A stretch of DNA of 64,000 bases from Mytilus trossulus (taxonomy: Eukaryota). Made by a program: the position numbers and the translations under genes. Within the stretch, counting starts at the first letter, position 1. Every line of letters starts with the position of its first letter. Below the pieces are notes generated by a model, which saw nothing but the letters and a program-made list of their open reading frames with translations, was not told where the DNA came from and searched no databases. This document shows, piece by piece, positions 4,401 to 63,051 of the stretch. The stretch is from contig NC_086374.1 of the NCBI RefSeq assembly GCF_036588685.1, positions 40,796,001-40,860,000 of the forward strand. Reading direction: 5' to 3'.

Positions 4401-7400
4401 TAGTTAATCTAGCCTTCTTCCTTCTAGATTCTAAATTTTCCCATTCCAATGATTTTATTAAATTTGAAACTGCTCCAGGTGATCTGTCTTTATAATCATT
4501 GAAGACAAACCTGGCTGCCTTACGCTGTACCTGCTCAACCTGAGTGATGTGTTGTTTTTTGTACGGATCCCAGACAGGGGAAGAGTATTCGACGACCAGA
4601 CGGACAAGTGATGTGTACGTAAGGTTTTTAACCTTACGTGTGCAGTTTTTTAAGTTCCTACGAAGAAAACCTAAGGTCTTATTTGCCTTACAAGTAATAT
4701 TGTCAATATGCGTTCCCCAATCAAGATCATGGCTTATAGTTACGCCTAAATATTTGCTGTCTTTTACTGCTTCTAAAATATGATTATGTAATATATAATC
4801 AAAAGTTGAAGGTTTACTTTTTTTAGAAATATGAATTACATAACACTTCTCAGGATTAAAATTCATTTGCCAATCCTCTTCCCATTTTACTAAACTAGAC
4901 AAATCTTTTTGAAGTAATTGTGCATCAGAACTATTATTTACATTTCTATATAATAAACAGTCATCTGCAAAAAGTCGTGCATTGCAAGTTACATGTTCGG
5001 GTAGGTCATTTATAAAGAGTAAAAATAATGTTGGGCCTAAAACTGTTCCCTGAGGGACACCAGAATCAACTGCTAATTTTGAAGATTTTACACCGTTTAA
5101 TAGTCCTTGCTGTTGCCTGTGAGCTAAAAAGTCATTTATCCAATTTAAATTTTGATTTCTAATACCATTGTTTATTTAATCCAGATTCCAATTCAAAAAC
5201 GCTACTCAATTGTATTAATCTTAAAATCTGTATACTTTTTGGTGATTATTAAAAGTAATATTTTAGAGTTATTGATTTTTTTGTATTAAAAAAAGAGGGG
5301 GTTTCACAATTCACATGTCGCGCCGAATCTCAAAACTGATTTATGATTATTGCTTAATGCTTTACACACTACCAACTTATATTAATCTATTAATCTGTAT
5401 ACTTTTTGGTGATTATTCAAAATCTAATTTTAGAGTTATTGATTTTTTTTTATTGCATAAAACTTCACACATGCACAAGACGATAGGCGTATCACTTTTA
5501 TATGCCCTTTGTTCATAGTATATGCAATTACATTTAGTTTGTTCTTAGGCCAACATGAATTATCGGTAGCAAAGACGATACGGGCATCAAAACTCTTAAA
5601 TTTCTTTAAAATTTCCATCGACGAATCCAAAATGACAGAGTCTGGACTAAAAGAAAATAAGTACAGTTATACACAAATGAAAAAAAACATAGCAAAAAAC
5701 AAAACTTTTAAACAGTTTGTGTGAAAAAAAATCACGAACTTTGTCTGTCTTAATAAGTATATATCACCATTACATGATGTGTATTGTTAGAAACACAGCC
5801 GAATGTCTTCTATTTTGATCATTAAACAAAACTTTAAAAAAAGTTCGAATTTTTTTATAGATTTAAATTGCCTTTTATTATGTCACAACAGAAATAATGC
5901 CGTTACAGACAAGACTCACCCATCAGTGATCAAAATTACAAGATTTTCTTTCATGGCATACTCTCCAAGATTTTCTTTCAATACGTTTACTTTATAACCA
6001 CCTTCTGTATACACTACTGCATCATAGTTTCTCCATGGCTGCTGAATGTCGAAAACCTAGTGCGAAGAAATACATTTTGTCATAGTGTTTTTTTCAGAAT
6101 TTCAACACAATCCATGTCAAAATTGGCAATTTTAAGAGAACATATCTGATTATATTCTAGCCCGGAAAAGCAAATATTTAATTTTGCGGCTCTGGAAGAG
6201 GTGTCTAAGGATTTATTGATATCAATTTGTCCAACTGTAACACTTACTAAGAATAATGATTATACTCATACCTTGTATTTTATTTTGTTTGTTTCTGCAG
6301 ACAATTCATATCTTCTTAGTTTTTTTGCATCTGTTACTCCTGCTGTTATTACCACAGCCAATAGCTCTGAAATTATCAGAATAAACTATAATAAAATTTC
6401 AATAATGACATAACTGACCAGTACATAGACATGACGGGATTTTTTTCGGAGTCCTTTAAGGCTTATTTCAAAATTGCTATATGGTCCCCATGCAATACCT
6501 ACCTAAAGAATGTTGAAATAAGGACTTGTGGTATAATTGCCGTTGAGACAACTTTTCATCCAAGATCAAAGGATATTGATCGTTTTGATACCAGTTGCTA
6601 TGTCTCAGTGCTACAACATACTATAATTTACTAAAAACAAATACACATGTCAAAATGCATCATCCATCTCTGAAAAAAATATTTAATTCTCAATTTGCAA
6701 ATAAAAAAAAACAAGGGACCATTAAAACCATACACGGAAGGATATGGTGACGGTTGCGGTTTGTGAGTACACATTCGCATCCGTATTTTCCTGACCAGTC
6801 AACAGACAAAGAAGTACAGAGTTCGATGTTTTGGTGTATATTCTCTGTCAGCAGATTTCTTAATCAGCAGTTTAACTTCATTAAGCTACAAGAATCCTCT
6901 GGCATCTTTTTGTTTTGTTTTACTTCTACATGTGTTTTGTCTACAGAGATATACACGCATAAATAGATATGAGCGGAAACTGATTACCAAAGTAGTATTA
7001 TTCTTGGCCTATTCAGCATAAACTTGTACCAACTGCAAGCGTCTAGTAAGTTTCTTACAATCAAACTTATGAAATCATTTTAATATATACTGCATGGAAT
7101 ATAATATCTCTGAGGTTGTATAACTTATTTACGTTTGAAATAATAGCATATACTATTTTCTCTGTTGTCTTCTCATGCATGTAGTTTATGTACTTTGGTT
7201 TTGGTTTTGCAGATTCAAGATTTTCGAGAGAAAAAATATGCATTCATTCATTCCTTCAGAACCTGTGACTACTATACTATAGTATAATATTCCCAGTTCA
7301 GAACACAACAATGAAGACAAAAACTATATCATATCGAATCTGTGAATACTACTAGATGATAAATGTATTATATTTCGTGCACAGAATAAACAATGTTTCC

Positions 7401-8657
7401 TACATGAAATCGCTGTTTTCTTTTCGCGTTTTTTTAACCACATCACCGGAAACCTTCTGTATTTTATGGTAGTCTGTTTTCATATCTATTTCATTTTCAA
7501 GACATCTTATCAAATTAAGAAAATATGTAATTTACTAATAAAGTAAATAAGATGTCTTATATAATTTCAACTACACCTTATAAACTACATACAATATAGC
7601 TATCTAAAGAGGGGGTATCCAACATAGTCAACATTGACAAGGGCTTTAGCCAGAGGGGAATTACCATTGGCAATTTGGGTATCCCCCGACATACGATCGT
7701 AATTGTTCTACCATATCAAACAACTATTGGGCAATGGATAATTAGGTTAATTGCCGGCGATGAACGAATAATCATAAGTTTTTCACCGGACGGTTATTTG
7801 GCAAGGTCATTCACATGTCGATTTTGACGAAAATAACCGAATGAATTCACACAGCATGATCTTTGTTGGTAAATGAATTTACTCAATTATACTGTGAGGT
7901 ATAGTTATACAAGATGTCTCATGAATTATTTGCCCGAAACATATATCTTTCAAGCATGCTGAATTTTGAAATAAAAACAATTTGAAAACAAAACCAATTT
8001 TTCCACATTTGTCGAAACATTCGAATTTTATAATGTATTTTACTATTAGTAGCAATTAAACTTATTTCGTGTGAATTGTTTAAAATTCTTATCTCTCTGA
8101 ATATATCAACAAAGTCATCATTGGAAACGTTGCTATACTTATCATAATTTCTTACAGTATTGAAGATGGGACTTCTGGACATCTTTACGCTTATCATTAT
8201 ACCGCACATACAATAAAACTGTTATTTTAAAAAAAAAACCCGTTATTTCATATGTACCAAGGGAACAATTTGGAATTCCCTATTATTTCGGTTTTTTTTA
8301 AATACTAACACAAAAATTAGAATTCCTATTAGAAATCAAACTTCTATTGGTGTGAGCTGTTTCAAATTCTGTTCTATCTGAATATGAATATAGGTCTTAT
8401 CAACGTCATCATTGAACACGGTGTCGGACTGGTCATCATTCAGGACATCATTACTTTGCGGTGTTGAAGTTCTTACTTCTTCAGGTCTATGACGCGTTAA
8501 ACATTATCCTGGATACAAATTAAAAACGGGCAAAACTAGGGGAAAAACAGAGGAAGATTTCTTGGCTTCAGAAAAATGCAAACTTACCTATATCTGAACT
8601 AACAGCAACACACAAATCAAATATCAAACCAAAAATACATATGCAGAAATTATCCAT
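1477..8657 (-). CDS. PLOD (procollagen lysyl hydroxylase/glucosyltransferase)-like N-terminal glycosyltransferase-domain protein, spliced; 3' end unresolved
   Basis: Phase-consistent GT/AG exons with no stops: 6366-6272 (ELLAVVITAGVTDAKKLRRYELSAETNKIKYK), 6056-5920 (VFDIQQPW...GGYKVNVLKENL...VILITDG), 5646-5532 (PDSVIL...ILKKFKSFDARIVFATDNSCWPKNKLN), 3881-3830 (SQYPSVGTFDNRFLSAG), 2407-2295 (AFIGYAKEIF...DMESDQLYYSEIFVDNELR), 1976-1913 (SKWNIKLDRKTSLFQNMRVNK), 1571-1477 (...PVIIYDSGPIK). These follow the PLOD GT motif order (GGGQKV, FxDSYD, CWP, KRFLNSGGFIG, DDDQLFY, LD..S.IFQN, HGNGP). Putative signal-peptide first coding exon 8657-8588 (MDNFCICIFGLIFDLCVAVSSDI, phase 1, fits the next exon) is less certain. 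Candidate last exon 93-43. Confidence 0.8.
2425..2815 (+). repeat. High-copy interspersed repeat (aaaagtaaaatcacaaaaatac...cctgacttggtacaggcattt family)
   Basis: Related copies near 18945-19290, 33548-33745 and 28915-29000; reverse copies near 19737-19865 and 24830-24903. Confidence 0.7.
3250..3665 (-). repeat. Interspersed repeat (aataaaggcaacagtagtataccgctgttc family)
   Basis: Homologous to 20086-20445 and 22104-22146 on the plus strand. Confidence 0.65.
3980..5175 (-). mobile_element. 5'-truncated non-LTR retrotransposon (CR1/L2-type LINE): RT C-terminal half, 3' UTR and tail
   Basis: Frame open from 5175 to 4147 with RT motifs SGVPQGTVLGPTLFLLFINDL, LFADD, WQMNFNPEKC, KYLGV and FSFYPRTISDWN. 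3' stem-loop at 4016-4031 followed by a (GAA)n tail at 3980-4000. Confidence 0.9.
4147..5175 (-). CDS. LINE reverse transcriptase fragment (partial ORF2)
   Basis: ORF-track 4147..4902 extends in frame upstream to include the FADD catalytic motif. No endonuclease domain or start codon. Confidence 0.85.
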   Translation of the reverse strand: MNNGIRNQNLNWINDFLAHRQQQGLLNGVKSSKLAVDSGVPQGTVLGPTLFLLFINDLPEHVTCNARLFADDCLLYRNVNNSSDAQLLQKDLSSLVKWEEDWQMNFNPEKCYVIHISKKSKPSTFDYILHNHILEAVKDSKYLGVTISHDLDWGTHIDNITCKANKTLGFLRRNLKNCTRKVKNLTYTSLVRLVVEYSSPVWDPYKKQHITQVEQVQRKAARFVFNDYKDRSPGAVSNLIKSLEWENLESRRKKARLTMLYKINWGLVEVPKDNLTISDRRTRGKHKFRQISTNKDFYKFSFYPRTISDWNSQPEAIGMSDTLESFKSGISTLTLEGSTATY

Positions 8658-10394
8658 TATACCCTCTTTCTATTTTATAAAAACATACGTGTATTATCTT
8701 ATGATAGACAATTGCAACATATTGTTCGTTTTATATGAAACATATTTTTACTATTGAAAAGATGTTACCACAAACGTAAGGCAAGAAAATGATTGTATAT
8801 TAAACATGTTAGATGATTTCAACATTTCATTAATTTATTTTGTAAACTGTTTTACTCACGTTACAATGAGTAGTGACGTTCTCTTGTTGATAAGGTATAT
8901 TAAAGACTGTGGACGCCAATAATCTGATAATGTTAGGAATATTCACAAAAATTGATCTGACATTACAAATTGAAATAAAGCGTATTAATTATACTGGTTT
9001 CTACATGATGAGTTAGGTAGATAGAGAGATATTGCAGTAATGTTAAGAAGTAAACTATGCTTTATTTTCATTTTTTTATGCAACATATTAAAAAAAATGA
9101 CAATGCAATGTGAAACTGTATCGGATGAACTTATCATTTTTTTTTTAATTCTAATACTATGTATTCAGTCGGTGCGCATTTTCGTAGACTCGTGCTGGGC
9201 AAACAATATTTTTGGTCACAGAGAATTGTTTTGGATAGAAAAGTATAGGCCCTACATAGGTCATTATAAAAAAAATCATGCAAATGTCTGTTATTTGGTT
9301 TTTTTAAGTCACAGACATAGACATGTATATAAAAAATAACACTTGAATATGTTAAATATGAATGTTTTGTGATACACTATAAACAGTTTACAGTATGAAC
9401 TGTTATAAAAAAATCCTTAATGATTTCTGAAACCCTTGGATACAGAGAGAATTAACTGTTTTTTTTTAATTATACCTTTCAGACCTAGAATAGGACTATT
9501 ATTCATACTATTTTTTATCAGGATTTATCACTATTTATAGAATTTTGATACATACAAACAGTTTTTTTTTAATGATTTAGGAGGACTGGTGTATGTTGGT
9601 TTTATAGTTATAAAAATTCAGAAAAAGGAAGAGTCTCATTTTTAAGTCACTGGTGTAACCAAAAGGCAAATTGGTTGGGTAAGAGTTATCTTTCTCAAGA
9701 TATTAGCATTTACAATAGTTTCTCTCCTAGCAATGTTACCTGTAAGCATGTTATGCACACAAACAAAACAACAATCTAATGTTGAAAATTAGTGAAAAAA
9801 TGTTAAAAGTAAGTAAAAGCTATTTCGTAAATGAAAATAGTGTCAATGGTGCACCGTCATAAAAATCATTTTCCGTAAGCTTTCCTTATATTAACTTTGA
9901 TTGAAGAAAAGATGTTGTTTGTAGAAACATGCACCAGGACAACATATAGAATAAGAGAATGGTGCACTTATTTTGCTACTAAATTAAAAAAATATACCTG
10001 TAAATCATTGGTGTTACTGTCAATATAATGTATCACCTATACAAATGTTTTCACAAAATGGTGCATGCTTGTATAAACACCAATGACACTATTTAGTAAC
10101 ACTATTGACATTTTTAGTTATTGATGTTATGTTAAATAATTTAGGATTTTAGATATACTGTTCTCAAATTTTATATATCTATATCAAGATTTACCGTGTG
10201 TTCAGTTTGAAATTCCGACACAAATAGATGTTTCACAAATTTGTGATTTTTAAATAGAAGGTGTTTTTGGCCACACCTTGTGCATGTGCATTTTTTTTTA
10301 AATTTGGACCATGGGTTTATTTGTAAAGCGATGAAGATATTAGAGTATAAGATAAACTTTCACTGATGATGTTTATATTTTTAATTTTTCATTC

Positions 10395-11080
10395 TTTTTT
10401 TATACGACCGCAATTTTTTTTTTTGCGTCGTATAATGCTATCATGTCGTCTGCGTCGTCGTCCGAAGACACATTACAGTGAATGGATCTCTATAAAGTTT
10501 AACCAGAAGGTTCAATACCTCTAAAGAAAGGTTGGTATTGATTTTGGGGGTTATGGTTCCAATGATTTAGGAATTAGGGACCAAAAAGGGGTCCAAAATA
10601 AGCATTTACGTAGTTTTCAAACAATGACTTGTGTTTATGTATATGAATCTCTCTGAAATTATATCACAAATTTAAATACCATAAATACCATAAAGGGATG
10701 GTTAGTGTTGACTCTGAGAGGTTAAGGTTAAATATGTTGGGTATGTTCGGATTTACCTCCCTTACAACTACTTGCAAATGATTTATAAAGAAATGTTAGG
10801 TTTTGGATTAAATCAAAATAAGTGGCATGGTAGTAGTTTTCATTTATTTTTTTTCAAATTTCTCAAATTCTTAATTTTTTGAAAAGAAGAAATCTCTAAT
10901 ATCCCAATAGACTTGTGAGATCTTGAAATTGTCTTGTGTCATAAACTCATATTATGTCAAAAATTCTGATCACAATCCAAATTCGGAGCTATATCTTAAA
11001 TGTTGTGTTCATACTTGTCCCAACTGTTCAGGTTCGACCTCTGCGGTCGTATAAAGCTGCGCCCTGCGGAGCACCTGGTT
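10395..11080 (-). mobile_element. Non-autonomous Helentron/HINE-like element
   Basis: Subterminal inverted repeats tatacgaccgca/tgcggtcgtata, (GTC)n tract, T-run flank. Same family as 35995-38844 in the opposite orientation. Confidence 0.7.
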
Positions 11081-20300: not shown

Positions 20301-21196
20301 AAGAAAACAATGTGGATTGAACCTGGTGTTGTGGCTAGCCAAACCTCGCGCTTTTATTGCAATGTTAAATATACCGCTAAAATGACAACATATGTGACAT
20401 GACAGAAATACAGTACAAATAAAATGCAATAACATTCATAAAACAGTACATCTGCAGTGTATCCACTATTTGTATTTGTAAATCTCATCCGTAAATATGT
20501 AAAATATTGATTACATATTAAACGATGCCCCTTTTTGATCTTCGTTTAGTATAGGCAATACTGGTACGTAAGTGAATATGATTTATAGCTTACAACACAT
20601 TATTCCATCATAATATTTTGAAACTAATTACTATTTTGTGTTTTTCTTTCAACCTTTGTATGTTTGATTTTCAACGAATATTATATGAAGCCTACTACAT
20701 ATACCAAAAACAATACACAACAGCTATTTAACGATATGTAAAGCATATGATAAATTTCACATGTTGACGGTGGCACTCATTGATCCATACGACTGCATGT
20801 TAAAGTGTTATTATTAAATTTAATAATGATCATTCATTGTATCTATCTTGTTACACAAAAAAGGCTTATCACAATAGTATTAATTTCATTACTTTTAAAA
20901 AATAACCGTGTATTTCAGTTAAATAATGTAAATATCAAGAATACATTATAATCATTTATCAATAATCGAACTTGAAGAAGTGGAACTTGTGGAATCATTC
21001 ATATGAAGAATTGTTAACATTTCACGTTTTAAAGTTGATTATTTATGAGTTTTAATGTTTTAGAATAACAACTTAACAAAATGTTCAGATAGATGTAAAA
21101 AAATACATTGGAAATGTTGGTTTCGTGGAATTCAAAGGACAATTGTACTGACGGGATTTCAATTATAAGGGAATATTTCAAATTATTATTCAAAAA

Positions 21197-21859
21197 ATGC
21201 CTATAATATTTCGTCCGAATAAAGTTGGATCAGAACCTGATTCCAGTGCCATTCCGGAAAATTGTACTGCGCAGTTAATGCATTATTTTGACTGTGTTTG
21301 CTCAGTATTAGATTTAGACTTTATAGAATACAACATTCAGAAACTTAGATCTTACAGAAGTTATTACAATTTGACCGACGGTGAAAAAAGAACGCTCTTC
21401 ATGTTATGTGGATTATTTTCAGTAGACGTTATGCGAGATAAATGTATTATCGAGAACGAGGCTTTGTGTGATGATGAACATGTGAAGTTCTTTTCGTTGC
21501 TTGCTGTTAAGACAATCGTAGAGCCAATCAAATACATTGAAATAGGTGAACTTCAGATCAAGGTAATACAAATAATGTTCTATAAAGAAAGTTGGATAAA
21601 GAAATTTTATCATAAACCTATGGAATACTTTCATGCATTATATTCTCATCTTAATGAACATCGAAAACCGGCAACTACTATTGACGCATCAATTGTAAGG
21701 ACGACTTCTTCCCCGGTTCAGCATAGCGATAGAAAAGATTTTATAGAAAGCACCAAGGGAAATAGCAGAGGTCACAAACACAAGGGATCTCTGTCATGGA
21801 AGAAAGCGAATGACACGTCTCGATCTCATACTTCGTGTTGCTCCTGTAGTATTCTATAG
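21197..21859 (+). CDS. Uncharacterised protein, 220 aa, intronless CDS, C-terminal CaaX (SCCSCSIL); paralog A
   Basis: Complete ATG-to-stop ORF. Aligns with 25506..26192 (NKVG/NRVG, IPENCTAQLMHYFDCVCSVL vs VPENPLARLMYYLNCMCTVL, IMFYKESWIKKFYHKPM vs IMFYNIAWLNRNYIEPM). Confidence 0.85.
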   Translation: MPIIFRPNKVGSEPDSSAIPENCTAQLMHYFDCVCSVLDLDFIEYNIQKLRSYRSYYNLTDGEKRTLFMLCGLFSVDVMRDKCIIENEALCDDEHVKFFSLLAVKTIVEPIKYIEIGELQIKVIQIMFYKESWIKKFYHKPMEYFHALYSHLNEHRKPATTIDASIVRTTSSPVQHSDRKDFIESTKGNSRGHKHKGSLSWKKANDTSRSHTSCCSCSIL

Positions 21860-22794
21860 AGAAGTTATAATTTATAATGAAAGGAACGATCAAAAACGCA
21901 GGACACTGCAAAATAATTATATAGACAGAATAATGAGAAAGGAGAATACTTTTCTAACTTTTATATTAAGAATAAGTTATTACAACGTATAAAATACCCA
22001 AGTTAGAATTAATGGCCAATAAATGAAATCCACACTGGCGTATCTTTTTAACTATTATGCTGAATAGTCAGCGGTTAACGGCGTCAAATGTTTATCTTGG
22101 TATAAATAAAGGCAACAGTAGTATACCGCTGTTCGAAAGTCATAAATATGTTTGTAGTTGTTCTATATCCTAGATAGATCTACTCTTAAAAATATTCATG
22201 TAGTTGCCATGGTTATTTCTGGAGATTTTCGATTGGCTGAAAGTTTATAATTTTATATTATGAGCTCCTTTATGTTAGGAAAGCCGTTTAAAACAACATG
22301 GAATAACCTCTTAATTTTGAAGCTTCAAACGTGCGTTGTTGTCTCGATCCAATGAACTTATAGCAAAAACAGGTACGCACTGAAATAATACTAATAGGAT
22401 TAACACAGTCAATGATTCAGAATCTTGATCAGTTACCTAACAATTGACGAAATTCTTGAGCAAACAAATATAAAGTAGTATGTTTTATGCTTCCTGTTTC
22501 ACTGAGTTCAAAATTAAAAAAGAAAAAAATATATAACAGTTAAAATTTAAATTACTTGTATTTCAATTTGATTTAAAATAATTTAAAATAATTTGACAGA
22601 TAAAATCTGAGGTATTTTAAATGCAATATAATAAATTAGAAATGAAATATTTTGACGGGATTGAATTGGCAAAGTCCCAAAAGAAGGTATCGAAGATTAC
22701 TTGGAAGTTGTACACTTTAATGAGTAAAACCAACTTCCTGTTTTAATATTACAATGTGATGATATAGTGAAATCAAACTTTCGAAAACACAACC

Positions 22795-23465
22795 TGGCAC
22801 TGCATGGTGTCGAATCGAAAAAGAGTCGGTATAGAAAAAAATACAACAGCTGAATTCCATCAACTATTTGAACTGTATGTGACTGTATGTTCTCAGTTTA
22901 CACGAACCAAATATGAGTAAAAGAATGAACTTTTGCCGCCAAGAGTCAAACAGTCATAAATGACTACCGTAAGCGTCACATAAAATTTTATTGTGATTTC
23001 TCTGAGGTCAAAAATAAATATCTGTTACCGTTATTTTTGGAAAAAAATAAATGTCATTGATCAATTAAAATCAGTCGATTCCTTTTATCGTCATCAAAGA
23101 AATTTAATCATCATGCACCAAAAATTACCGTTAACCATATTTGTCAAATTGTTTTACAGTTTTTGTCATGACGGTAACCCCTATTGCAACCTTCAAATAT
23201 TATGAGACTGTAGTATTGTTTTCGAACTCGGTGACGAGGAAAATGTTTTGCTATTACTTCTATGTGCAAAATTAAGTCATATGTGGCACAAAAAGGCAGA
23301 ATCATTTTCATAATGAGGACGTTCGATGACGTGACACATGTGTTTTTCAACATAAATACAGAAACATTGACATTTGCAGCATCAGCGTCAGTCATAGAAG
23401 AGAAGAAAAATGTGGCAGTAAAAAATATAATATTTCGCAGTATGGCATGGTTAAATCGATATTGA
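22795..23465 (+). pseudogene. Pseudogene of the same CaaX-protein family, closest to paralog B
   Basis: Nucleotide similarity to about 25506-25925. Start region altered, deletions and frameshifts, an insertion of about 280 bp at 22915-23193, and no C-terminal tail. ORF-track 23262..23465 retains FFNINTETLTFAASASVI...AWLNR. Confidence 0.85.
22915..23193. mobile_element. Short transposon insertion with target-site duplication
   Basis: caaatat duplicated at 22908-22914 and 23194-23200. The intact paralog has the empty site ccaaatattatgagact. Confidence 0.75.
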
Positions 23466-24549
23466 CTTTTGCATTTTTGTTTTTGATTACGAATTTATCA
23501 GCTCGAATATCAGATGTTCTTGCTGATATAGTCAGTAACAAGACAAAAAAATGTCAGTATTCTATATTTTTTTGTAGAGCCTTTCCAATAAAGCCCAAAT
23601 AGAACGACGGTTTAAGGGTAGAATAGGTTACTTAGGAAGTGACTTTTGAATGGTCAGAGGATGACCTTGTGCTAATGATCTTGAATTTGTATCTGTGGAG
23701 CGTAAGGCATTGGATGTATTATTTCATTCTTAGGAACTTATTTGCGGTATTTACGCCATTTCATTTCCACATTAGCGAATGCTTAGTTCTTCGGCTTTTA
23801 CGATTACACATATTCTTATCGAGTTCTTGAAGTTTAAATGCATGTTAAAATTGGACGTATTATTGTCCCTTTTTGACATTTCAAATTATTTAAAAAAACG
23901 TGATATTCAAATTATGTAATTTCCATACACTAGTTGAAATAAGATTATAAATGTTTCTCGTGTATACATTATAATTTACAGTAGAATAAAAGAGCGTCTT
24001 TAATAACAACATATTTTACCGTTCGAATTGATGATCATTTTATTATCTAGGTTTGCACGATAATGAGTTCCCTGTAATAACATGACCATATGGATCGTTT
24101 CTATGTTATTTCTTTTTCCAAGTCAATGTCACAAAGAAGTTGTGGTATGATTGCCAATATGACAACTGTCCACAAGACCCCAAATGACACAGACATTAAA
24201 AACTATAGGTCACCGTACGGCTTCCCACAATGATCAAAGCGAATTGCATATTGTCAGATATAAAAGGCCCAAATAGACAAATATAAAACAATTCACACGA
24301 GAAAACTAATGGCCTAATTTATGGACATAAAAAAGATAACGAAAAACAAATATGTAAAACATGAACAGTTTATTTTCTATCTATAACTTTGAATGTCCCT
24401 CTGGTATCTTTCGCCGCTGTTCTTAACTGCGAAGTTTTACTTACTCGTGTTGAAGGAGAATTATGTTCCGTAAAGGCGACAAATGTAAAACTAATAATAA
24501 TGTATTTATTGATGACATTTTGGATGCTTTTGTGCTAAAACTGTTTTGG

Positions 24550-24661
24550 TTTGTGCCAGTAGTTTTCAAAATACCTAGCATCGTTTGTGCCAGTAGTTTT
24601 CAAAATACCTAGCATCGTTTGTGCCAGTAGTTTTCAAAATACATAGCATCATTTGCGCCAG
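24550..24661. repeat. 34-bp tandem repeat, about 3.3 copies
   Basis: tttgtgccagtagttttcaaaatacctagcatcg at 24550, 24584 and 24618; partial copy at 24652. Confidence 0.9.
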
Positions 24662-25374
24662 AGTTTAAGTTTTACGATTACATAATTCGTTAATAAAATC
24701 TTATTTTTATTTACACTCGAGATGTAATTTTTAAAAAGATGATTCGTTAAAGAAGCCATTGGAGGCCGATATGGGAGTCTCGGGAGGATACCATGGCCAA
24801 TATTGAAAAGGGTTGTTATAATCTATTTATCATTTGCCATTTGATTAGAGATTTTCCGTTTTGAATTTTCCTCTGCGTTCGATGTTTTTGTGATTTTACT
24901 TTTTATATGGTAGGTTTAGAAACAACGAACAAAGACAATTGAAACCACAAAGATGGAATAACAACTTTTTGGTTATACAATTTCGCGTATGTATGTTTTT
25001 GTCTCTAGTAGTGGATCCGATAACGAAATTCGAACAAACACACGTGTTATCAAAATAATAGGATCAACCAAGTCAAAACTGTTACTTATGATAAATAAAT
25101 AAAAAGTTAAATAAAAAACATAACAAATAGCAATATCAACTTATTACTATTTAAATAAGGTTGTTTGGTTTTAAATATCCTGTTTACTCGAATTTAAAAT
25201 TTTAGAAGGCAAAATATAATAGTTATACCTAGACAAATTATCTTTGGAAATTTACACTATTTTAATTTGATTTAAATGAATATGATATATATTTTTAAAT
25301 AAGGTCTAGAGTATTTTAAACGCAATTTGATAAACAATAAAAGATAAAATTTGACATGTTTGATATATTAAACT

Positions 25375-25490
25375 GGCATATTTCCAAAACTCTATGGAAG
25401 ATTACTTAGAAGTTGTACACCCCACTAGGCAAACTTCCTGTTTCAATTTTAAAATTTGAAGAATTAGACATTGTGAAACTGAACGTTAAA
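25375..25490 (+). promoter_or_regulatory. Putative promoter module shared between paralog B and the pseudogene
   Basis: gaagattactt(a/g)gaagttgtacac at 25397 and 22692; ETS-type acttcctg at 25433 and 22733. Both lie at the same spacing upstream of the CDS. Confidence 0.45.
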
Positions 25491-25505
25491 ACATAACCAT
25501 CTAAT

Positions 25506-26192
25506 ATGGCACTGGTACTGAATCGGAATAGAGTTGGTGTTGAAAATACTTCAACAACGGTTGGAGTCCCGGAAAACCCTCTAGCAAGATTGATGTATTA
25601 TTTGAACTGCATGTGTACTGTTCTTAGTTTACAGGAACCAAATATTATGAGACTAATTAACTATAATAATTTTTTCGATCTTGGTGCTGAGGAAAAGGTT
25701 TTATTATTACTTCTGTGTGCAAAATTAAACCCTGTGGCACTGACAGGACAGTGTTTATTTCACGATGAGGACGTACGATCAAATGCAGGTCGGGACAATG
25801 AGTTCTACAACATAAATGCAGAAACAATGACGTTTGCGGCATCAGAGTCGGTCATAGTTGGTGAGAAAAGAGTGGCAGTTAAGAAGATAATGTTTTACAA
25901 TATTGCTTGGTTAAATCGGAATTACATTGAACCAATGAAGTTTTTTTTAGAAGACGAAGAAGATGAAGAGCCGTCATATGTGCAAAACAGGCCACAAACT
26001 GCAGCTTATTATCATCAAGCTGTGACATATTACCATCAACAACCAACACAAAACCAACGACCAGCAATCACCTATAACCAACAACCATCCATAACATACA
26101 ACCAACCAACGACTCAACAGTCATCCTACAACTACAATGCACCATCGTATCAACGTCAGAACTCTTGCAGTAGCTGCTGTGTTATCTTATAA
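25506..26192 (+). CDS. Uncharacterised protein, 228 aa, intronless CDS, Q/Y/P-rich linker, C-terminal CaaX (SCSSCCVIL); paralog B
   Basis: Complete ORF, paralogous to 21197..21859. Confidence 0.88.
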   Translation: MALVLNRNRVGVENTSTTVGVPENPLARLMYYLNCMCTVLSLQEPNIMRLINYNNFFDLGAEEKVLLLLLCAKLNPVALTGQCLFHDEDVRSNAGRDNEFYNINAETMTFAASESVIVGEKRVAVKKIMFYNIAWLNRNYIEPMKFFLEDEEDEEPSYVQNRPQTAAYYHQAVTYYHQQPTQNQRPAITYNQQPSITYNQPTTQQSSYNYNAPSYQRQNSCSSCCVIL

Positions 26193-26249
26193 ATCAGATT
26201 TAACACTTCCGGTATATTTTTTTTTATTTAAAATTCGTTTATTGTTATT

Positions 26250-26569
26250 AGTATATATAGCAATTATATTTAGCTGATCTGTAAAAATAACATCTTCATG
26301 CCTTATATATCATGTACTGTAGTACGCCGCTAGATTAAAACTGACGTGGAAAGGTAACATATGGCCACCGAAAGCTCTTTTATTGAGAGCCCAGGTGGTC
26401 GTGTGGTCTAGCGGGACGGCTGCAGTGCAGGCGATTTGGTGTCACGATATCACAGTAGCATGGGTTCGAATCCCGGCGAGGGAAGAACCAAAAATTTGCG
26501 AAAGCAAATTTACAGATCTAACATTGTTGGGTTGATGTTTAGACGAGTTGTATATATATATATATATAT
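26250..26569 (+). mobile_element. tRNA-related (Pol III A/B box) interspersed element in a (TA)n context
   Basis: A box tggtcgtgtgg at 26396-26406 and B box ggttcgaatcc at 26463-26473. Degraded reverse copy at about 60040-60145. Confidence 0.65.
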
Positions 26570-43100: not shown

Positions 43101-46100
43101 AAAGAAAAGTCATGATTAATAACATATCTGCAGATCTTATATATATTATCTATCAAATAAAATTGATTGTAATAAATACTGAAACATGTATGACTTAAAA
43201 GCATTTTTCGGGTCATATTTTTTGTGAAGTGTCTTGCATTTCTAAAACAAGATAAACATTATGAACTAATGATTCCCCTGCTATATACATATCTGATAAA
43301 TAATAAGTTGATCAGTGATAGATATGAAATTCAATGGCATGGTATATTATGCTCACACAAAGCTTGGTAATTATGTTTAAGGATCTATATATTTAATCAG
43401 TGGAAGATGATAAATGTTAATTCTTTTCAAAATACATTGTACTAGATAACATTCTCAAATAAAATTTTCAGCTAATTTCAGGAAGCTCAGATTTGTAGTT
43501 CCTGAGAAAAATACTAAGATGGGATGTTTAGGGAGTCTCATGGGGGGTTCTGATCCCTAATCCCGCTTACTTTTTTTTCAGATTCCCTTATCCCACTTAC
43601 AATATGTACACAAGCAATTCTCATTTTTTTTGTAGTTTCACATGTCATGCTTACAAAAAATTGGCAATCCTGTGTCATGCCTAGACCTCAATGAGACCTA
43701 CTGTATAGAGGTAAACCAGTTTGATCCCCTCTTTCTAGGAGGGGTAATAATCTAGTTCAAAATTAAATGCAGTTATTTATATTTTTTCTTTTTAATATAT
43801 AGTAAAAATAAATCATCTCACATGTAAATTATGAAAAAGGATGTTTAATTTAAATCTTAATTTTAAGCTAACACATTGACATTTACAGAAGTTGTGATCA
43901 TCAAAGAAATAGTACTTTAACCTGTATGTCTCAACATGATGCCATTTTACTTATCTTACAAATTATTTAAAGAATTGGATTAAATACCTTTTCTAATTGG
44001 ATTATATACCTTCTTCATCTTTCTAAAATTGTTCATTAACAAATTTATAAATTATCAAGAAACTAAAGTTTTAACTCCCTTGAGCAAAGTTGACCTTAGA
44101 TGGATTTGGCTATTATTCTAAGGTCTTATTTGTCACAAAGCCCTTCAATTTAAAAAAAAAATTGTACATCTTTGGCTGTTGCATATTTCACTTGAATGTT
44201 CCTGATCAAGAAAAATGCTTTGGATGCATGAAATGTTGTGTTGCTTAATTTATTTTCAATAAGTTCATGAAGTTATAAATGTTTTTTGTCATACAAGGTC
44301 AGTTAATTGCACTAAGACAAACAGGATGGAAAAAATTGAACCTTCTTTTCAATAGATTTTTTTCAAAAACCAAATCAGAATGTGACATGATTTGAAACTT
44401 TGGACTGGTTCCTAAGTGTACAAACCTTTGTAAGAGTAGACAGACAAGCCTGGTACTTTTCTTTGGTATCTATAACAGTAATATGATCATCTGATAGGTT
44501 TAAAGTATAATAATGAGCAGACATTTCTGTTTCAGAATAACAGTCATCATCCCAATTTTCTCCTTCTGCATTTTGCTCTTGTTTATCTTCTCCTCTGAAA
44601 TACCAAGAACAGCATTTGACTGAAATCATGAACTAAAATGATGTTATAAGAATAATGAAACTGCTGTCTGAGAAAATGTAAAAGTTTTACAGAGTTGGGG
44701 AAAACAAAACTACCCTAAAACTGCATGCAGCTTATACTAACAGTGATCAGAAAGAAGCTATATTTATAACTGATAATGCTGTTTTTTACAACTGCTTCTA
44801 CTATGCTTAAATGTGCAAAAAATACTTGTTTTAAAAATTCCAATAAACCAGTCCTTAAAACATTTTGGCAACTGGCCTTCTTCAATTTCTTTATTTTTCT
44901 TTTTAACTACATGGTAGACATTTTATTTTCACTATCATTAAGATGTTAAAGATGTTTTCCATAACATTAACAAAGAACTAAATCTATAACAAACTTACTC
45001 ATCCATTTCCCTTCTTTTAACAGCAACCACTTCTGGAATACATTCATCAGACAACTGGAAATTTCTAGCCCATTTAACAGCTTCCGTAAGTTCATTATAA
45101 CACATTAATTGTTCTACTAACTGTTCCTTCAAATAGTCATTATCACTAACTGCATTCTGGAAAACAAAACCAGGCATTTATAAATCACTTTCATATTTGT
45201 GCACTTTCCTATAAATTCCCTATGCGACAATGCCTATGTTATCAAGTCATAGTCATAAACGATTGGTTGATGACTAAATTTTGTTCAGAATTCAATCAAA
45301 CTTCTGTTGTGGATCAATGGAAGTTTTTTAAATAATTGAAACAAAATCATACATAAACTGTACCCAGAGAAAATAGATGTCAAACTCAAAAATAAAACAA
45401 ATTGATAGCAATGTAAAAAGCAAATACATGTAAAAGTTTAAAGTGAAAAAGTTTATTTTTGATCACTCAATACATAATTCTTTTTTTAACATAACTATTA
45501 CCTCTACTAGTTCTTCCCAACTTCCTGTACCCATCTTCCCCTACAATAAATACAAACAAATTCTATGATCAATTATTACAGAGTAACTTAAATCCAGTAT
45601 TATCTGGATTTTTATTTTATTACAGGTTAGATATTGTAAGGATATAAATATCTATAATACTAAAATTACGAGGTCCAACTTGTCAGCCATCATCACATAA
45701 AAACGATGAATCAAAGATGACAATACCAATACTGAAAAAGGCACACGCATAGTAATGTATTTTAGTTCAGTCACGGACCCGCGATATCACGGGTGTGTTC
45801 TAGTATAATATATAATTGCCAAACCATTCTAAATATTTAATGATATTATTTATTCCTGTTTTGACCCTTTTTTATATATGTCAATGTAAATTTTTTATCA
45901 ACATAATGCATATGGTTACTGTGGTAAAATTCATGAATGTCATAAGTTATTATGTTGAATGCCTATTTATCTATAAAAAAACAATCTCAATTACATATAA
46001 TACATTTCTACCAGTTTCTCTTTAACATTCATTTACCCTGGTACAATATACTGTTATCATGGTTATTTTTTTCAGCCTACATGAAAGTATCATCCTATTA

Positions 46101-49100
46101 CCTCTATATATCTCCTGTACAAAAGATACCTACATGAAAGGATCATCCTATTACCTCTATATATCTCCTGTACAAAAGATACCTACATGAAAGCATCATC
46201 CTATTACCTCTATATATCTCCTGTACAAAAGATACCTACATGAAAGGATCATCCTATTACCTCTATATATCTCCTGTACAAAAGATACCTACATGAAAGT
46301 ATCATCCTATTACCTCTATATATCTCCTGTACAAAAGTCCTATTACCTCTATATATCTCCTGTACAAAAGATACCTACATGAAAGCATCATCCTATTACC
46401 TCTATATATCTCCTGTACAAAAGATACCTTCATGAAAGGATCATCCTATTACCTCTATATATCTCCTGTACAAAAGATACCTACATGAAAGCATCATCCT
46501 ATTACCTCTATATATCTCCTGTACAAAAGATACCTACATGAAAGGATCATCCTATTACCTCTATATATCTCCTGTACAAAAGATACCTACATGAAAGCAT
46601 CATCCTATTACCTCTATATATCTCCTGTACAAAAGATACCTACATGAAAGCATCATCCTATTACCTCTATATATCTCCTGTACAAAAGATACCTACATGA
46701 AAGGATCATCCTATTACCTCTATATATCTCCTGTACAAAAGATACCTACATGAAAGGATCATCCTATTACCTCTATATATCTCCTGTACAAAAGATACCT
46801 ACATGAAAGCATCATCCTATTACCTCTATATATCTCCTGTACAAAAGATACCTTCATGAAAGCATCATCCTATTACCTCTATATATCTCCTGTACAAAAG
46901 ATACCTACATGAAAGGATCATCCTATTACCTCTATATATCTCCTGTACAAAAGATACCTACATGAAAGGATCATCCTATTACCTCTATATATCTCCTGTA
47001 CAAAAGATACCTACATGAAAGGATCATCCTATTACCTCTATATATCTCCTGTACAAAAGATACCTACATGAAAGGATCATCCTATTACCTCTATATATCT
47101 CCTGTACAAAAGATACCTACATGAAAGGATCATCCTATTACCTCTATATATCTCCTGTACAAAAGATACCTACATGAAAGCATCATCCTATTACCTCTAT
47201 ATATCTCCTGTACAAAAGATACCTACATGAAAGCATCATCCTATTACCTCTATATATCTCCTGTACAAAAGATACCTACATGAAAGCATCATCCTATTAC
47301 CTCTATATATCTCCTGTACAAAAGATACCTACATGAAAGGATCATCCTATTACCTCTATATATCTCCTGTACAAAAGATACCTACATGAAAGGATCATCC
47401 TATTACCTCTATATATCTCCTGTACAAAAGATACCTACATGAAAGCATCATCCTATTACCTCTATATATCTCCTGTACAAAAGATACCTACATGAAAGGA
47501 TCATCCTATTACCTCTATATATCTCCTGTACAAAAGATACCTACATGAAAGGATCATCCTATTACCTCTATATATCTCCTGTACAAAAGATACCTACATG
47601 AAAGCATCATCCTATTACCTCTATATATCTCCTGTACAAAAGATACCTACATGAAAGGATCATCCTTAATACCTCTATATATCTCCTGTACAAAAGATAC
47701 CTACATGAAAGGATCATCCTATTACCTCTATATATCTCCTGTACAAAAGATACCTACATGAAAGCATCATCCTATTACCTCTATATATCTCCTGTACAAA
47801 AGATACCTACATGAAAGCATCATCCTATTACCTCTATATATCTCCTGTACAAAAGATACCTACATGAAAGGATCATCCTATTACCTCTATATATCTCCTG
47901 TACAAAAGATACCTACATGAAAGCATCATCCTATTACCTCTATATATCTCCTGTACAAAAGATACCTACATGAAAGCATCATCCTATTACCTCTATATAT
48001 CTCCTGTACAAAAGATACCTACATGAAAGCATCATCCTATTACCTCTATATATCTCCTGTACAAAAGATACCTTCATGAAAGCATCATCCTATTACCTCT
48101 ATATATCTCCTGTACAAAAGATACCTACATGAAAGCATCATCCTATTACCTCTATATATCTCCTGTACAAAAGATACCTTCATGAAAGCATCATCCTATT
48201 ACCTCTATATATCTCCTGTACAAAAGATACCTACATGAAAGCATCATCCTATTACCTCTATATATCTCCTGTACAAAAGATACCTACATGAAAGCATCAT
48301 CCTATTACCTCTATATATCTCCTGTACAAAAGATACCTACATGAAAGCATCATCCTATTACCTCTATATATCTCCTGTACAAAAGATACCTACATGAAAG
48401 CATCATCCTATTACCTCTATATATCTCCTGTACAAAAGATACCTACATGAAAGGATCATCCTATTACCTCTATATATCTCCTGTACAAAAGATACCTACA
48501 TGAAAGCATCCTCCTATTACCTCTATATATCTCCTGTACAAAAGATACCTACATGAAAGCATCATCCTATTACCTCTATATATCTCCTGTACAAAAGATA
48601 CCTTCATGAAAGTATCATCCTATTACCTCTATATATCTCCTGTACAAAAGATACCTACATGAAAGCATCATCCTATTACCATGATTACCTCTATATATCT
48701 CCTGTACAAAAGATACCTACATGAAAGCATCATCCTATTACCTCTATATATCTCCTGTACAAAAGATACCTACATGAAAGCATCATCCTATTACCTCTAT
48801 ATATCTCCTGTACAAAAGATACCTACATGAAAGGATCATCCTATTACCTCTATATATCTCCTGTACAAAAGATACCTACATGAAAGCATCATCCTATTAC
48901 CTCTATATATCTCCTGTACAAAAGATACCTACATGAAAGGATCATCCTATTACCTCTATATATCTCCTGTACAAAAGATACCTACATGAAAGGATCATCC
49001 TATTACCTCTATATATCTCCTGTACAAAAGATACCTACATGAAAGCATCATCATATTACCTCTATATATCTCCTGTACAAAAGATACCTACATGAAAGCA

Positions 49101-62388: not shown

Positions 62389-63051
62389 ACTAGAATGTGG
62401 TGACCGTCCATGGATACCTATAGTTATGATCTCTTGTTTATACTTTGTGTATTATTACTATTAAGTATGAAAAAAAATAAAATTATCAAATAATACACAG
62501 AATCATAAGTGCTTGAACTTATAATCCAATGCGACAACATTTAGAACGGGAGAAAGCTACAGATATTTTAAAGCATATATAGTAGAAAATATCCAAGGAC
62601 CAGCGCTTCGATCGGTTATTGACATAATTTTTGCATAGCCTATGCAGGCCCTAATAAAGCATACCCGTATGAAGGACAAGAGGGAGAAGAAATTTTACCT
62701 TACATGCTATACTCTCATGAGTCTGTACTTTGAATCCTCAATTGGTCCGGACCGCTGATCTATTTCAGTACAACAAGTGTTTCGGATGGATTGCACATAC
62801 ATTTCGATAAGCAAAAATACAGAAAAACATCAACAAAAAGATATGTCGTGATTCCCATTCAAGGTAGCAGAATGAATATTAGATCACAATTATGTAAAAT
62901 ACATCCAATAAGAAAAATCTCAGAAAATGCGTGCCTTCACATCCAATGAGCTTATGAAATTTATATTAAAAAAATAATACATAGAAATCAAAAATACAGA
63001 ATTCCTTGCATTAAATAATGTCACATTCTTTTGATATTCTTTAGAAATACA

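What the first reader, a model, noticed from the sequence alone, without database searches (positions are those of the whole stretch)
21197..26192. Tandem cluster of an unrecognised family of intronless, lipid-anchored (CaaL) proteins
Seen: two intact single-exon CDSs and a pseudogene, all in the same orientation, in a region where every other gene is spliced. The paralogs share an N-terminal domain of about 145 aa (NxVG, PEN..A.LM.Y..C.C.VL, L...EK..L..LC, IMFY...W....Y..PM) that I cannot assign to a named family. Their linkers are unrelated and low-complexity, yet both end in Cys-rich CaaX motifs (CCSCSIL, SCCVIL). Established: CaaL termini are geranylgeranyltransferase-I substrates and adjacent Cys residues are typically palmitoylated. 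Inference: a membrane-tethered effector or signalling domain evolving by birth and death, possibly in defence. This is the best candidate for an undescribed system in the window.
Basis: partly seen in the sequence, partly recalled or inferred. Interest (0 to 1): 0.8.

Follow-up and report, generated by a model that had tools for sequence, protein, structure and literature searches.

The report
New lipid-anchored protein family in mussel
Two expressed, intron-free mussel genes and a dead copy belong to a large unnamed protein family, scattered across animals and protists, whose domain matches no known fold and is tied to membranes by a lipid tail or another anchor; what the domain does is still unknown.

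Summary
Window 21197-21859 and 25506-26192 are intact single-exon ORFs of 220 and 228 aa. They share a 150-aa N-terminal domain (32% identity, E 6e-23). Their linkers are unrelated and low-complexity, and they end in CCSCSIL and SCCVIL. A broken B-type copy lies between them at 22804-23465.

The family is real. The domain has dN/dS of 0.08-0.50, and RNA-like contigs cover both genes colinearly. This genome, which looks like a mytilid mussel, has 27 matches. An exhaustive HMMER search found 1145 clusters at 50% identity. Named members come from bivalves, bdelloid rotifers, a flatworm, a sponge, a ciliate and a parabasalid, and all are labelled 'uncharacterized'.

The C-terminal anchor is interchangeable. 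It is a CaaX box in 155 of 284 proteins (position a2 is I, L or V in 149), a hydrophobic tail anchor in 46, and a LITAF zinc ribbon in 9.

My reading is a cytosol-facing, membrane-tethered module that is probably non-catalytic and works by binding. A defence role is untested. This scan had not reported this family on other DNA.

The parts
21197..21859 (+). Gene A: intact single-exon CDS of 220 aa. Domain is about residues 1-150, followed by an S/K/T/H-rich linker and the end CCSCSIL.
   Evidence: ORF. Orthologues at 98% and 57-59% identity keep CC.C.IL. RNA-like contigs are colinear with it. 16 of the 17 listed variants are synonymous.
21845..21856 (+). Gene A CaaX box, C-S-I-L. Three more Cys lie within the 5 residues upstream.
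   Evidence: Read from the sequence. Family-wide CaaX statistics.
22018..22023 (+). AATAAA polyadenylation-like signal of gene A. An RNA-like contig ends at 22033.
   Evidence: Sequence. Contig X1 record 1 spans 21208-22033.
22804..23465 (+). Pseudogene of the B type. It has frameshifts, an in-frame stop, an insertion of about 280 nt at 22915-23193, and has lost the linker and CaaX.
   Evidence: tblastn pieces in three frames. blastn to B gives 66.7-84% identity. Profile match at 23319-23468.
25506..26192 (+). Gene B: intact single-exon CDS of 228 aa. Domain is residues 1-150, followed by a Q/Y/P/N-rich linker and the end SCCVIL.
   Evidence: ORF. Relatives at 90, 71, 59 and 53% identity keep C.IL. 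RNA-like contigs. AlphaFold models.
26061..26102 (+). Linker motif PAITY (26061-26075) and its repeat PSITY (26088-26102).
   Evidence: The motif occurs in 18 of 268 family proteins against 0.05 expected by shuffling.
26178..26189 (+). Gene B CaaX box, C-V-I-L, with a Cys directly upstream.
   Evidence: Sequence. Family statistics.

Best explanation
The two genes encode cytosolic proteins with three parts. The first is a compact alpha/beta domain of about 130 aa with a fold that has not been described. The second is a fast-evolving disordered spacer of 60-70 aa. The third is a C-terminal CaaL box with neighbouring cysteines.

By the established rules of protein prenylation, the CaaL box would be geranylgeranylated, trimmed and methylated. 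The neighbouring cysteines would then be palmitoylated. Together these would fix the domain to the cytosolic face of a membrane on a flexible tether.

The genes belong to a large, old, patchily distributed eukaryotic family. In that family the same domain is attached to whichever membrane anchor is at hand: a CaaX box, a tail-anchor helix, a LITAF monotopic zinc ribbon, or a transmembrane helix followed by extracellular BspA-type repeats. The domain therefore works at the membrane surface.

Among the columns conserved at >=90%, the only polar residues are one Asn and two Tyr. I therefore think the domain is a binding or adaptor module that recruits or holds a partner at the membrane, not an enzyme.

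In the mussel the family grew by tandem duplication and loses copies to decay, and this locus shows both.

Shown: gene structure, family membership, conservation of the anchors, purifying selection, probable transcription, and lack of any sequence or fold match. Inferred: lipidation, cytosolic topology, and the non-catalytic binding role.
For: Anatomy.

Family size: 27 matches in this genome, and 12 of 17 ORF-bearing loci end in CaaX. There are 1145 clusters at E<=1e-3 and 720 at <=1e-10. 260 of 281 metagenomic pattern hits were confirmed.

Taxa: bivalves, Rotaria, Macrostomum, Tritrichomonas, Pseudomicrothorax and Amphimedon.

Anchors:
- 155 of 284 proteins have Cys at position -4. Position a2 is I in 128, L in 14 and V in 7. 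X is L in 80.
- 87 have another Cys within 5 residues upstream, and 13 have a polybasic stretch instead.
- 46 have a hydrophobic tail and 9 have a LITAF-like end.
- Pfam zf-LITAF-like hits P0125, P0142 and P0145 at E 4e-10 to 8e-7. P0136 and P0147 have a TM helix plus DUF285/LRR.
- Both ends of LITAF are cytosolic (PMC5142333, passages read).

Structure: the tail has pLDDT <50 and the domain 85-93. The domain-only model has pLDDT 88.2 and pTM 0.85 with the same topology.

Topology signals: no TM helix or signal peptide in A or B; the maximum 19-residue hydropathy is 1.4-1.6.

Conservation profile: no His, Asp, Glu, Ser, Cys or Lys column reaches >=90%.

Selection: domain dN/dS is 0.08-0.50 in 8 pairs and linker dN/dS is 0.48-0.92 in 6 pairs. 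Variants are 16 synonymous to 1 nonsynonymous in A and 9 to 6 in B.

Transcription: in 4 of 4 runs, contigs cover the two genes at word depth 4-77, while much of the unique intergenic DNA (e.g. 23292-24027) has depth 0 in all four runs. 24 runs from 13 studies hold parts of the stretch.
Against: Prenylation, palmitoylation and membrane localisation were not observed.

The tool's 'RNA' label for the runs is a guess. My argument that they are RNA rests only on the coverage pattern.

Missing conserved catalytic-type residues is weak evidence against an enzyme. Cys35 is 82% conserved and K/R28 is 89%.

71 of 268 proteins in hand have no recognisable anchor. Many are fragments, but some are domain-only ORFs, such as L006, L007, L010 and L017 in this genome. 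Tethering is therefore not obligatory.

The protein sets include near-duplicates, so the counts are not independent events.

No partner, pathway or compartment is known.
Confidence: 0.6

Rival explanations
1. Immune or defence module. In this view the tethered domain senses or blocks intracellular pathogens at host membranes, and the tandem birth-and-death reflects an arms race.
For: The family is expanded and clustered with decaying copies in the mussel. The linkers are relaxed and fast-evolving. Gene B has 6 nonsynonymous variants among the 15 listed. In one metagenomic contig, a member lies next to a MACPF gene and an ART-TPR gene. Other, unchecked notes of this scan list CaaX ends on immune-type genes in this genome.
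Against: The domain is under purifying, not diversifying, selection (omega 0.08-0.50). Gene A has 16 synonymous variants to 1 nonsynonymous. I have no expression data under challenge. PADLOC gave only chance-level hits. The domain is well conserved from a parabasalid to bivalves at about 30-35% identity, which fits a housekeeping interaction better than an arms race. The neighbourhood evidence is a single anecdote.
Confidence: 0.2
2. A membrane-tethered enzyme of a new class, for example one acting on lipids or on a membrane protein, with an active site that simple column conservation does not reveal.
For: Several partly conserved polar or nucleophilic positions exist: C35 82%, C71 69%, K/R28 89%, N98 97%, Y32 99%. 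The fold matches nothing, so no catalytic class can be excluded by analogy.
Against: In 148 diverse sequences no column is >=90% His, Asp, Glu, Ser, Cys or Lys. The domain is small, at about 130 aa. Some members carry 2-4 tandem copies of the domain (P0013, P0015, P0021, P0027), which is more typical of binding modules.
Confidence: 0.13
3. A gene spread by a mobile element, a virus or horizontal transfer. This would explain the missing introns and the patchy taxonomic range.
For: All 27 genomic matches and the 80 metagenomic matches that were kept are single contiguous stretches. The range is patchy and includes bdelloid rotifers. A dispersed repeat of about 240 nt lies near several copies.
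Against: Flanks are shared only between recent tandem duplicates, and there is no common element structure. None of 66 pattern hits in IMG/VR and none of 8 in 185,579 prokaryotic species genomes encodes a relative. There is no BFVD fold match. In the tree, bivalve and rotifer sequences group together, apart from the protist, flatworm and unlabelled LITAF/BspA-type rows, at support 93/87, which the tool does not count as strong (starred). This is compatible with vertical descent. The viral and prokaryote scans each used one peptide pattern, so their sensitivity is limited.
Confidence: 0.06
4. Chance ORFs or misread non-coding DNA.
For: None beyond the lack of annotation names.
Against: E 6e-23 between the paralogues. 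Hundreds of homologues. dN/dS below 1. A confident fold prediction. Contigs of expressed-looking runs.
Confidence: 0.01

Closest known systems
CaaX-anchored peripheral membrane proteins with a hypervariable linker (Ras/Rho/Ral GTPases, PRL phosphatases, G-gamma)
   Same: The layout is the same: a globular domain, a disordered variable spacer, then C-a-a-X. Either extra Cys (a palmitoylation-type second signal) or a polybasic stretch lies upstream. The ends CC.IL and CVIL resemble Ral/Rho and G-gamma ends; that resemblance is recalled, not tested.
   Different: The globular domain is unrelated. No Ras or any other Pfam family was hit at E<=10, and no fold match was found. No nucleotide-binding motif was found by these scans.
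Ykt6 and other longin SNAREs (the same cytosolic domain carried on either a lipid anchor or a TM anchor)
   Same: An N-terminal domain of about 130-140 aa is tethered by CC-a-a-X in one branch and by a tail-anchor helix in others. This shows that anchor swapping around one cytosolic module is an established pattern (recalled).
   Different: The secondary-structure order here is helices first, then a 4-5 strand sheet, then a long helix. This is not the longin beta-beta-alpha-beta-beta-beta-alpha order (recalled). No longin structure appeared in the fold searches. The only SNARE hits were weak: 2 of 55 members, best E 0.0036, below Pfam's cut-off; the one I looked at (P0103) lies over its tail helix.
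LITAF/CDIP1 family (PF10601)
   Same: A minority of relatives end in a bona fide zf-LITAF-like domain. That domain anchors proteins to the cytosolic face of endosomal membranes (PMC5142333).
   Different: The window's two proteins have no LITAF domain. Canonical LITAF proteins have a proline-rich N-terminus, not this domain (PMC5142333, section 5 passage).
Uncharacterized database entries: Mya arenaria LOC128234104, Mercenaria mercenaria LOC128545856, Pinctada imbricata FSP39_013267, Tritrichomonas musculus M9Y10_036790 and M9Y10_040570, Amphimedon queenslandica A0A1X7TIR4
   Same: These are true homologues with the same domain, and most have a CaaX end.

Membership tests
CaaX prenylation substrates (GGTase-I type) | Cys exactly four residues from the C-terminus | tested here: met
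   A ends in CSIL and B in CVIL. Also seen in 12 of 17 ORF-bearing paralogous loci and 155 of 284 family proteins.
CaaX prenylation substrates (GGTase-I type) | Aliphatic residue at a2, and X = Leu (or Phe) for geranylgeranylation. The rule is recalled from established biochemistry. | tested here: met
   a2 is Ile and X is Leu in both genes. Family-wide, a2 is I, L or V in 149 of 155, and X is L in 80 and F in 7 of 155. X is S, Q or M in 49 of 155, which is the farnesyl type.
CaaX prenylation substrates (GGTase-I type) | An accessible, unstructured C-terminus | tested here: met
   Residues 152-228 of B have pLDDT <50. The linkers are low-complexity.
CaaX prenylation substrates (GGTase-I type) | Covalent prenyl group and CaaX-dependent membrane binding | not testable with these tools
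   This needs metabolic labelling or localisation experiments.
Ras-superfamily small GTPases | G domain (Pfam Ras/Roc/Arf models; P-loop) | tested here: not met
   No Pfam family at E<=10 for A or B. No GTPase model among the families listed for 55 members (the first 25 of 36 families were shown). Rab8a and Rab11 structures appear only at chance level in Foldseek, at E 2.2 and 2.7.
Tail-anchored membrane proteins | A single hydrophobic helix within about 40 residues of the C-terminus | tested here: not met
   In A and B the maximum 19-residue hydropathy is 1.4-1.6, and it lies inside the domain. The feature is met by 46 of 268 relatives.
LITAF-domain proteins (PF10601) | C-terminal zf-LITAF-like zinc ribbon with a hydrophobic insert | tested here: not met
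   Absent from A and B. Present in relatives P0125, P0142, P0145 and P0211.
Longin-domain SNAREs (Ykt6-like) | Longin fold plus a SNARE heptad motif | tested here: not met
Any Pfam, NCBIfam or PADLOC family, or any solved fold, for the N-terminal domain | Significant sequence or structure match | tested here: not met

The most novel reading that the evidence does not exclude
The domain is an ancient eukaryotic invention with a genuinely new fold. It works on the cytosolic face of endocytic, phagosomal or lysosomal membranes. It has survived, and repeatedly expanded, mainly in organisms that feed by phagocytosis or intracellular digestion, and it was lost from the standard model organisms, which would explain why it was never named. 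All named members come from such feeders: a ciliate, a trichomonad, a sponge, a flatworm, bdelloid rotifers and bivalves. Some relatives use the endosomal LITAF anchor. The [R]PAITY linker motif, conserved between phyla, would then be a docking or sorting signal.
Probability: 0.15. Interest if true: 0.8.

Novelty: categorically new. Interest (0 to 1): 0.62.

Why it matters
More than a thousand sequence clusters across at least six major eukaryotic groups share a well-folded domain that no database names and no solved structure resembles. That marks a sizeable blind spot in protein annotation.

The interchangeable anchors already indicate where the domain works, which is the cytosolic surface of membranes. 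That makes function directly testable by localisation, prenylation mutants, proximity labelling and a crystal structure.

For mussel biology, it adds a multi-copy family of at least 27 loci, evolving by tandem birth and death, to the set of lineage-expanded genes. It is also a candidate for presence/absence variation.

If the fold is truly new, it is of interest for structural genomics whatever its function.

Tried and rejected
Sequence libraries
- Pfam at E<=10 on A and B and on 55 members gave nothing for the N-domain. The hits were only to fused parts: LITAF, ZZ, DUF285/LRR, GILT and Flg_new.
- NCBIfam gave nothing.
- PADLOC gave only hits at E>=0.01, over different regions in different proteins. 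I took these as chance.
- A PDB sequence profile gave a best E of 0.044, to a phage baseplate protein. I rejected it.

Fold searches

ESM Atlas
- Two calls gave no usable hit.

Virus and prokaryote origin
- The pattern scans were negative. Each used only one peptide pattern.

Mobile-element origin
- Flank blastn showed homology only between recent duplicates, plus a short dispersed repeat.

SNARE lead
- The hits were 2 of 55 members, best E 0.0036, below cut-off. In P0103 the match lies over the tail helix. I rejected the lead.

Literature
- Five searches found no paper on this family.
- I read passages of PMC5142333 only. For PMC5095921 and the others I saw only the search listing.
- Supplementary files were not opened. 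The Additional files of PMC5142333 on LITAF domain architectures might list this fusion.

Taxonomy
- Three cluster look-ups named only 2 further organisms among 30 proteins. Most members come from unnamed metagenome or Logan assemblies, so absence from any lineage is not shown.

dN/dS between A and B
- Synonymous sites are saturated, so no value could be computed.

Full report
THE LOCUS

The ORF listing gives two intact ORFs on the + strand. Gene A is 21197-21859, 220 aa, ending CCSCSIL. Gene B is 25506-26192, 228 aa, ending SCCVIL. They align only over the first ~150 residues: 32% identity, 57% positives, E 6e-23.

The linkers differ in make-up. A's is S/K/T/H-rich and B's is Q/Y/P/N-rich. 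Neither protein has a signal peptide or a transmembrane helix; the maximum 19-residue hydropathy is 1.4-1.6, and it lies inside the domain.

A third, B-like copy lies between them at 22804-23465. It is broken. Its pieces lie in three reading frames, with an in-frame stop, an insertion of about 280 nt (22915-23193) and nothing after the domain. Its 5' flank (22559-22848) is 67% identical to B's flank (25258-25556), so the duplication carried the upstream region with it.

REAL, SELECTED AND PROBABLY TRANSCRIBED GENES

Close relatives of B (90, 71, 59 and 53% identity) end in CCVIL, CCCTIL, CCVIL and CWCTIL. Close relatives of A (98, 59, 59 and 57%) end in CCSCSIL, CCTCSIL, CCLCCIL and CCTCSIL. 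Their linkers drift.

I computed Nei-Gojobori dN/dS between paralogues of this genome. For the domain it is 0.08-0.50 in the 8 pairs whose synonymous sites are not saturated. For the linker it is 0.48-0.92 in 6 pairs. A against B is saturated.

The look-up of sequencing runs listed 24 runs from 13 studies and four coded organisms, each holding 10-22% of the 5.5-kb stretch. I laid four of them. Their contigs cover gene A (20908-22033) and gene B (25437-26269) colinearly, with no joint inside either gene. Unique intergenic stretches have depth 0, and repeats have depth in the thousands. One contig ends at 22033, 10 nt after an AATAAA at 22018-22023.

The tool labels the runs 'RNA?' as a guess. 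The gene-only coverage pattern is what makes me read them as RNA.

Of the variants the tool listed inside the genes, 16 of 17 in A and 9 of 15 in B are synonymous. A further 64 differences were not shown by the tool.

THE FAMILY IN THIS GENOME

A profile of 11 family members (A1) finds 27 matches at E<=0.01 in the 1.30-Gb assembly. Each is one contiguous stretch. They are clustered on contigs C2, C5, C8 and C17, with singles on C13 and C38.

Twenty loci were fetched. Seventeen have an ORF of at least 110 aa over the match, and 12 of those end in a CaaX box: CVIL, CSIL, CCIL, CNIL, CTIL, CCIQ and CVVM. L006, L007, L010 and L017 stop just after the domain. L020 is truncated. L014, L015 and L019 are broken.

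Flanks are shared only between recent tandem duplicates, apart from a dispersed repeat of about 240 nt. One copy, L003, is almost identical to a Mytilus coruscus protein on the tree: end branches 0.09 and 0.007, support 100/100. Earlier unchecked notes of this scan also call the genome a mussel.

THE FAMILY ELSEWHERE

The exhaustive HMMER search of 1.84 billion representatives returned 1145 clusters at E<=1e-3, 720 at <=1e-10 and 155 at <=1e-30.

Fifteen proteins carry an organism name, and all are 'uncharacterized', 'unnamed' or 'hypothetical':
- Bivalves: Pinctada imbricata, Mytilus coruscus, Mya arenaria, Mercenaria mercenaria.
- Bdelloid rotifers: four Rotaria species.
- Flatworm: Macrostomum lignano.
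- Sponge: Amphimedon queenslandica.
- Ciliate: Pseudomicrothorax dubius.
- Parabasalid: Tritrichomonas musculus.

The metagenome scan confirmed 260 of 281 pattern hits. Some contigs carry two copies about 10 kb apart. The viral scan confirmed 0 of 66 pattern hits and the prokaryotic scan 0 of 8, each with one pattern only.

A maximum-likelihood tree of 41 rows puts bivalve and rotifer sequences together (93/87). Tritrichomonas is outside that group. The ciliate, the flatworm and the unlabelled LITAF/BspA-type rows lie on the other side. The inside of the bivalve-rotifer group is unresolved, and several long branches make placements unsure. I left most unlabelled proteins out of that tree.

Absence from other lineages is not shown, because most members are unlabelled.

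NO KNOWN FAMILY AND NO KNOWN FOLD

- Pfam at E<=10 finds nothing in A or B, and nothing for the N-domain in any of 55 members.
- NCBIfam finds nothing. PADLOC finds only scattered hits at E>=0.01.
- A profile against all PDB sequences has a best E of 0.044.
- AlphaFold2 with 11 sequences models residues 20-150 at pLDDT 85-93 and leaves the tail below 50.
- With 148 sequences, the domain alone reaches pLDDT 88.2 and pTM 0.85. All five models score 85.5-88.2 and the topology is identical: helices 25-39, 47-50, 53-58, 61-73 and 76-79; strand 84-86; helix 88-93; strands 98-102, 115-118, 121-125 and 127-131; helix 133-150.
- Foldseek against the PDB gives no match at E<=0.001, with best E 0.63 and 1.2.
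- BFVD gives a best E of 0.52. The ESM Atlas gave no usable hit.
- AlphaFold DB and HHsearch were not on hand, so 'new fold' is a strong indication and not a proof.

THE ANCHORS

Among 284 distinct proteins (268 fetched plus 16 from this genome, near-duplicates included), 155 have Cys at -4. Position a2 is Ile in 128, Leu in 14 and Val in 7. X is Leu in 80, Ser in 29, Gln in 12, Ile in 9, Met in 8, Phe in 7, and another residue in 10. Of these 155, 87 have another Cys within five residues upstream, 13 have at least 4 Lys/Arg in the preceding 12, and 55 have neither.

Among the 268 fetched proteins, 46 end instead in a hydrophobic helix, 9 end in an H.CP.CG knuckle, and 71 have no recognisable anchor; many of those 71 are fragments.

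Pfam confirms zf-LITAF-like in P0125, P0142 and P0145 (E 4e-10 to 8e-7). It also confirms a TM helix followed by DUF285/LRR repeats in P0136 and P0147, and ZZ fingers in P0152 and P0232. P0013, P0015, P0021 and P0027 carry 2-4 copies of the domain.

LITAF is a monotopic anchor with both ends in the cytosol (PMC5142333, passages read).

A CaaX box with aliphatic a2 and X=Leu is a GGTase-I substrate. X=Ser, Met or Gln is a farnesyltransferase substrate. Upstream Cys or a polybasic stretch serves as the second membrane signal.

WHAT I THINK IT DOES

One domain is joined to four unrelated devices that all place an N-terminal part on the cytosolic face of a membrane. That says the domain works there.

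The columns conserved at >=90% in 148 sequences are A27, L29, M30, Y31, Y32, P76, N98, F100, M129, W135 and P143. These are mostly core hydrophobics. The only polar ones are one Asn and two Tyr. The domain also occurs in tandem arrays. I therefore favour a binding or adaptor module over an enzyme, at roughly 3 to 1.

The linker is a spacer. It carries a short motif, [R]PAITY, right after the last helix. The motif occurs in 18 of 268 proteins against 0.05 expected by shuffling. It is found in bivalve and rotifer members and in both CaaX and TM classes, and it appears twice in gene B. That looks like a docking or modification site.

Which membrane, and which partner, I cannot say.

RIVALS

A defence role is possible but unsupported. 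The domain is conserved rather than diversifying. The only contextual hint is one rotifer-like metagenomic contig where a member sits beside a MACPF gene and an ART-TPR gene.

An unrecognised enzyme cannot be excluded. A mobile-element, viral or horizontal origin is not supported by flanks, scans or tree.

COMPARISON WITH THE KNOWN

The layout is that of Ras/Rho/Ral, PRL or G-gamma tails, and the anchor swapping recalls Ykt6 against TM-anchored longin SNAREs. The domain is neither a GTPase nor a longin domain by the tests above.

Five literature searches found no description of the family. Supplements were closed.

VERDICT

I rate it categorically new as a protein domain. I rate interest at 0.62 because function is unknown and uncharacterised domains are common, offset by the size of the family, the clean anchor logic and the apparently new fold.

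This family was not reported earlier in this scan on other DNA.

Noticed in passing
window 26061-26075 and 26088-26102 (gene B linker); also P0006, P0018, P0161, P0165 and others: The short linear motif [R]PAITY lies directly after the domain's last helix in 18 of 268 family proteins, against 0.05 expected by shuffling. It is shared by bivalve and rotifer members and by CaaX and TM classes. It may be a docking or phosphorylation site.
   Followed up: partly
window 24133-24367; also about 22100-22150, 24764-24947 and 26268-26400: A dispersed repeat of about 240 nt recurs at 70-81% identity in the flanks of family loci L004, L008, L009, L013, L014 and L020. This and the other listed spots have word depth in the hundreds to thousands in the RNA-like runs, so they are probably SINE/MITE-like elements.
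   Followed up: no
L061 (metagenome contig ERZ778027 NODE-1063), 4417-5526 and 8245-10572: In a gene-dense eukaryotic metagenome contig, a family member is flanked by a MACPF (perforin-like) gene and an ADP-ribosyltransferase-TPR gene. In L034 the neighbour is Mss4. This is anecdotal context only.
   Followed up: partly
P0136, P0147 (ENA metagenome proteins): The domain sits at the N-terminus, followed by a TM helix and then DUF285/BspA-type leucine-rich repeats. This is a receptor-like type II layout that would put the domain on the cytosolic side.
   Followed up: partly
G000:C2:63454489-63455181 (L016): A paralogue in this genome ends in KKKDCVVM. This is a polybasic, farnesyl-type end like K-Ras4B (recalled), not the Cys-rich CaaL end, so paralogues may go to different membranes.
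   Followed up: no
window 46001-50000 and 62001-64000: Strong negative GC skew: -0.50 and -0.43 at 46-50 kb, and -0.21 with AT skew +0.22 at 62-64 kb. The first stretch is the subject of another note of this scan (s1-820822). I did not examine the second.
   Followed up: no
window 23108-23291 (pseudogene): Low contig depth (6-75) over part of the pseudogene in 3 of 4 runs at the 90% likeness threshold. I did not resolve whether this is residual transcription or cross-laying from gene B.
   Followed up: no
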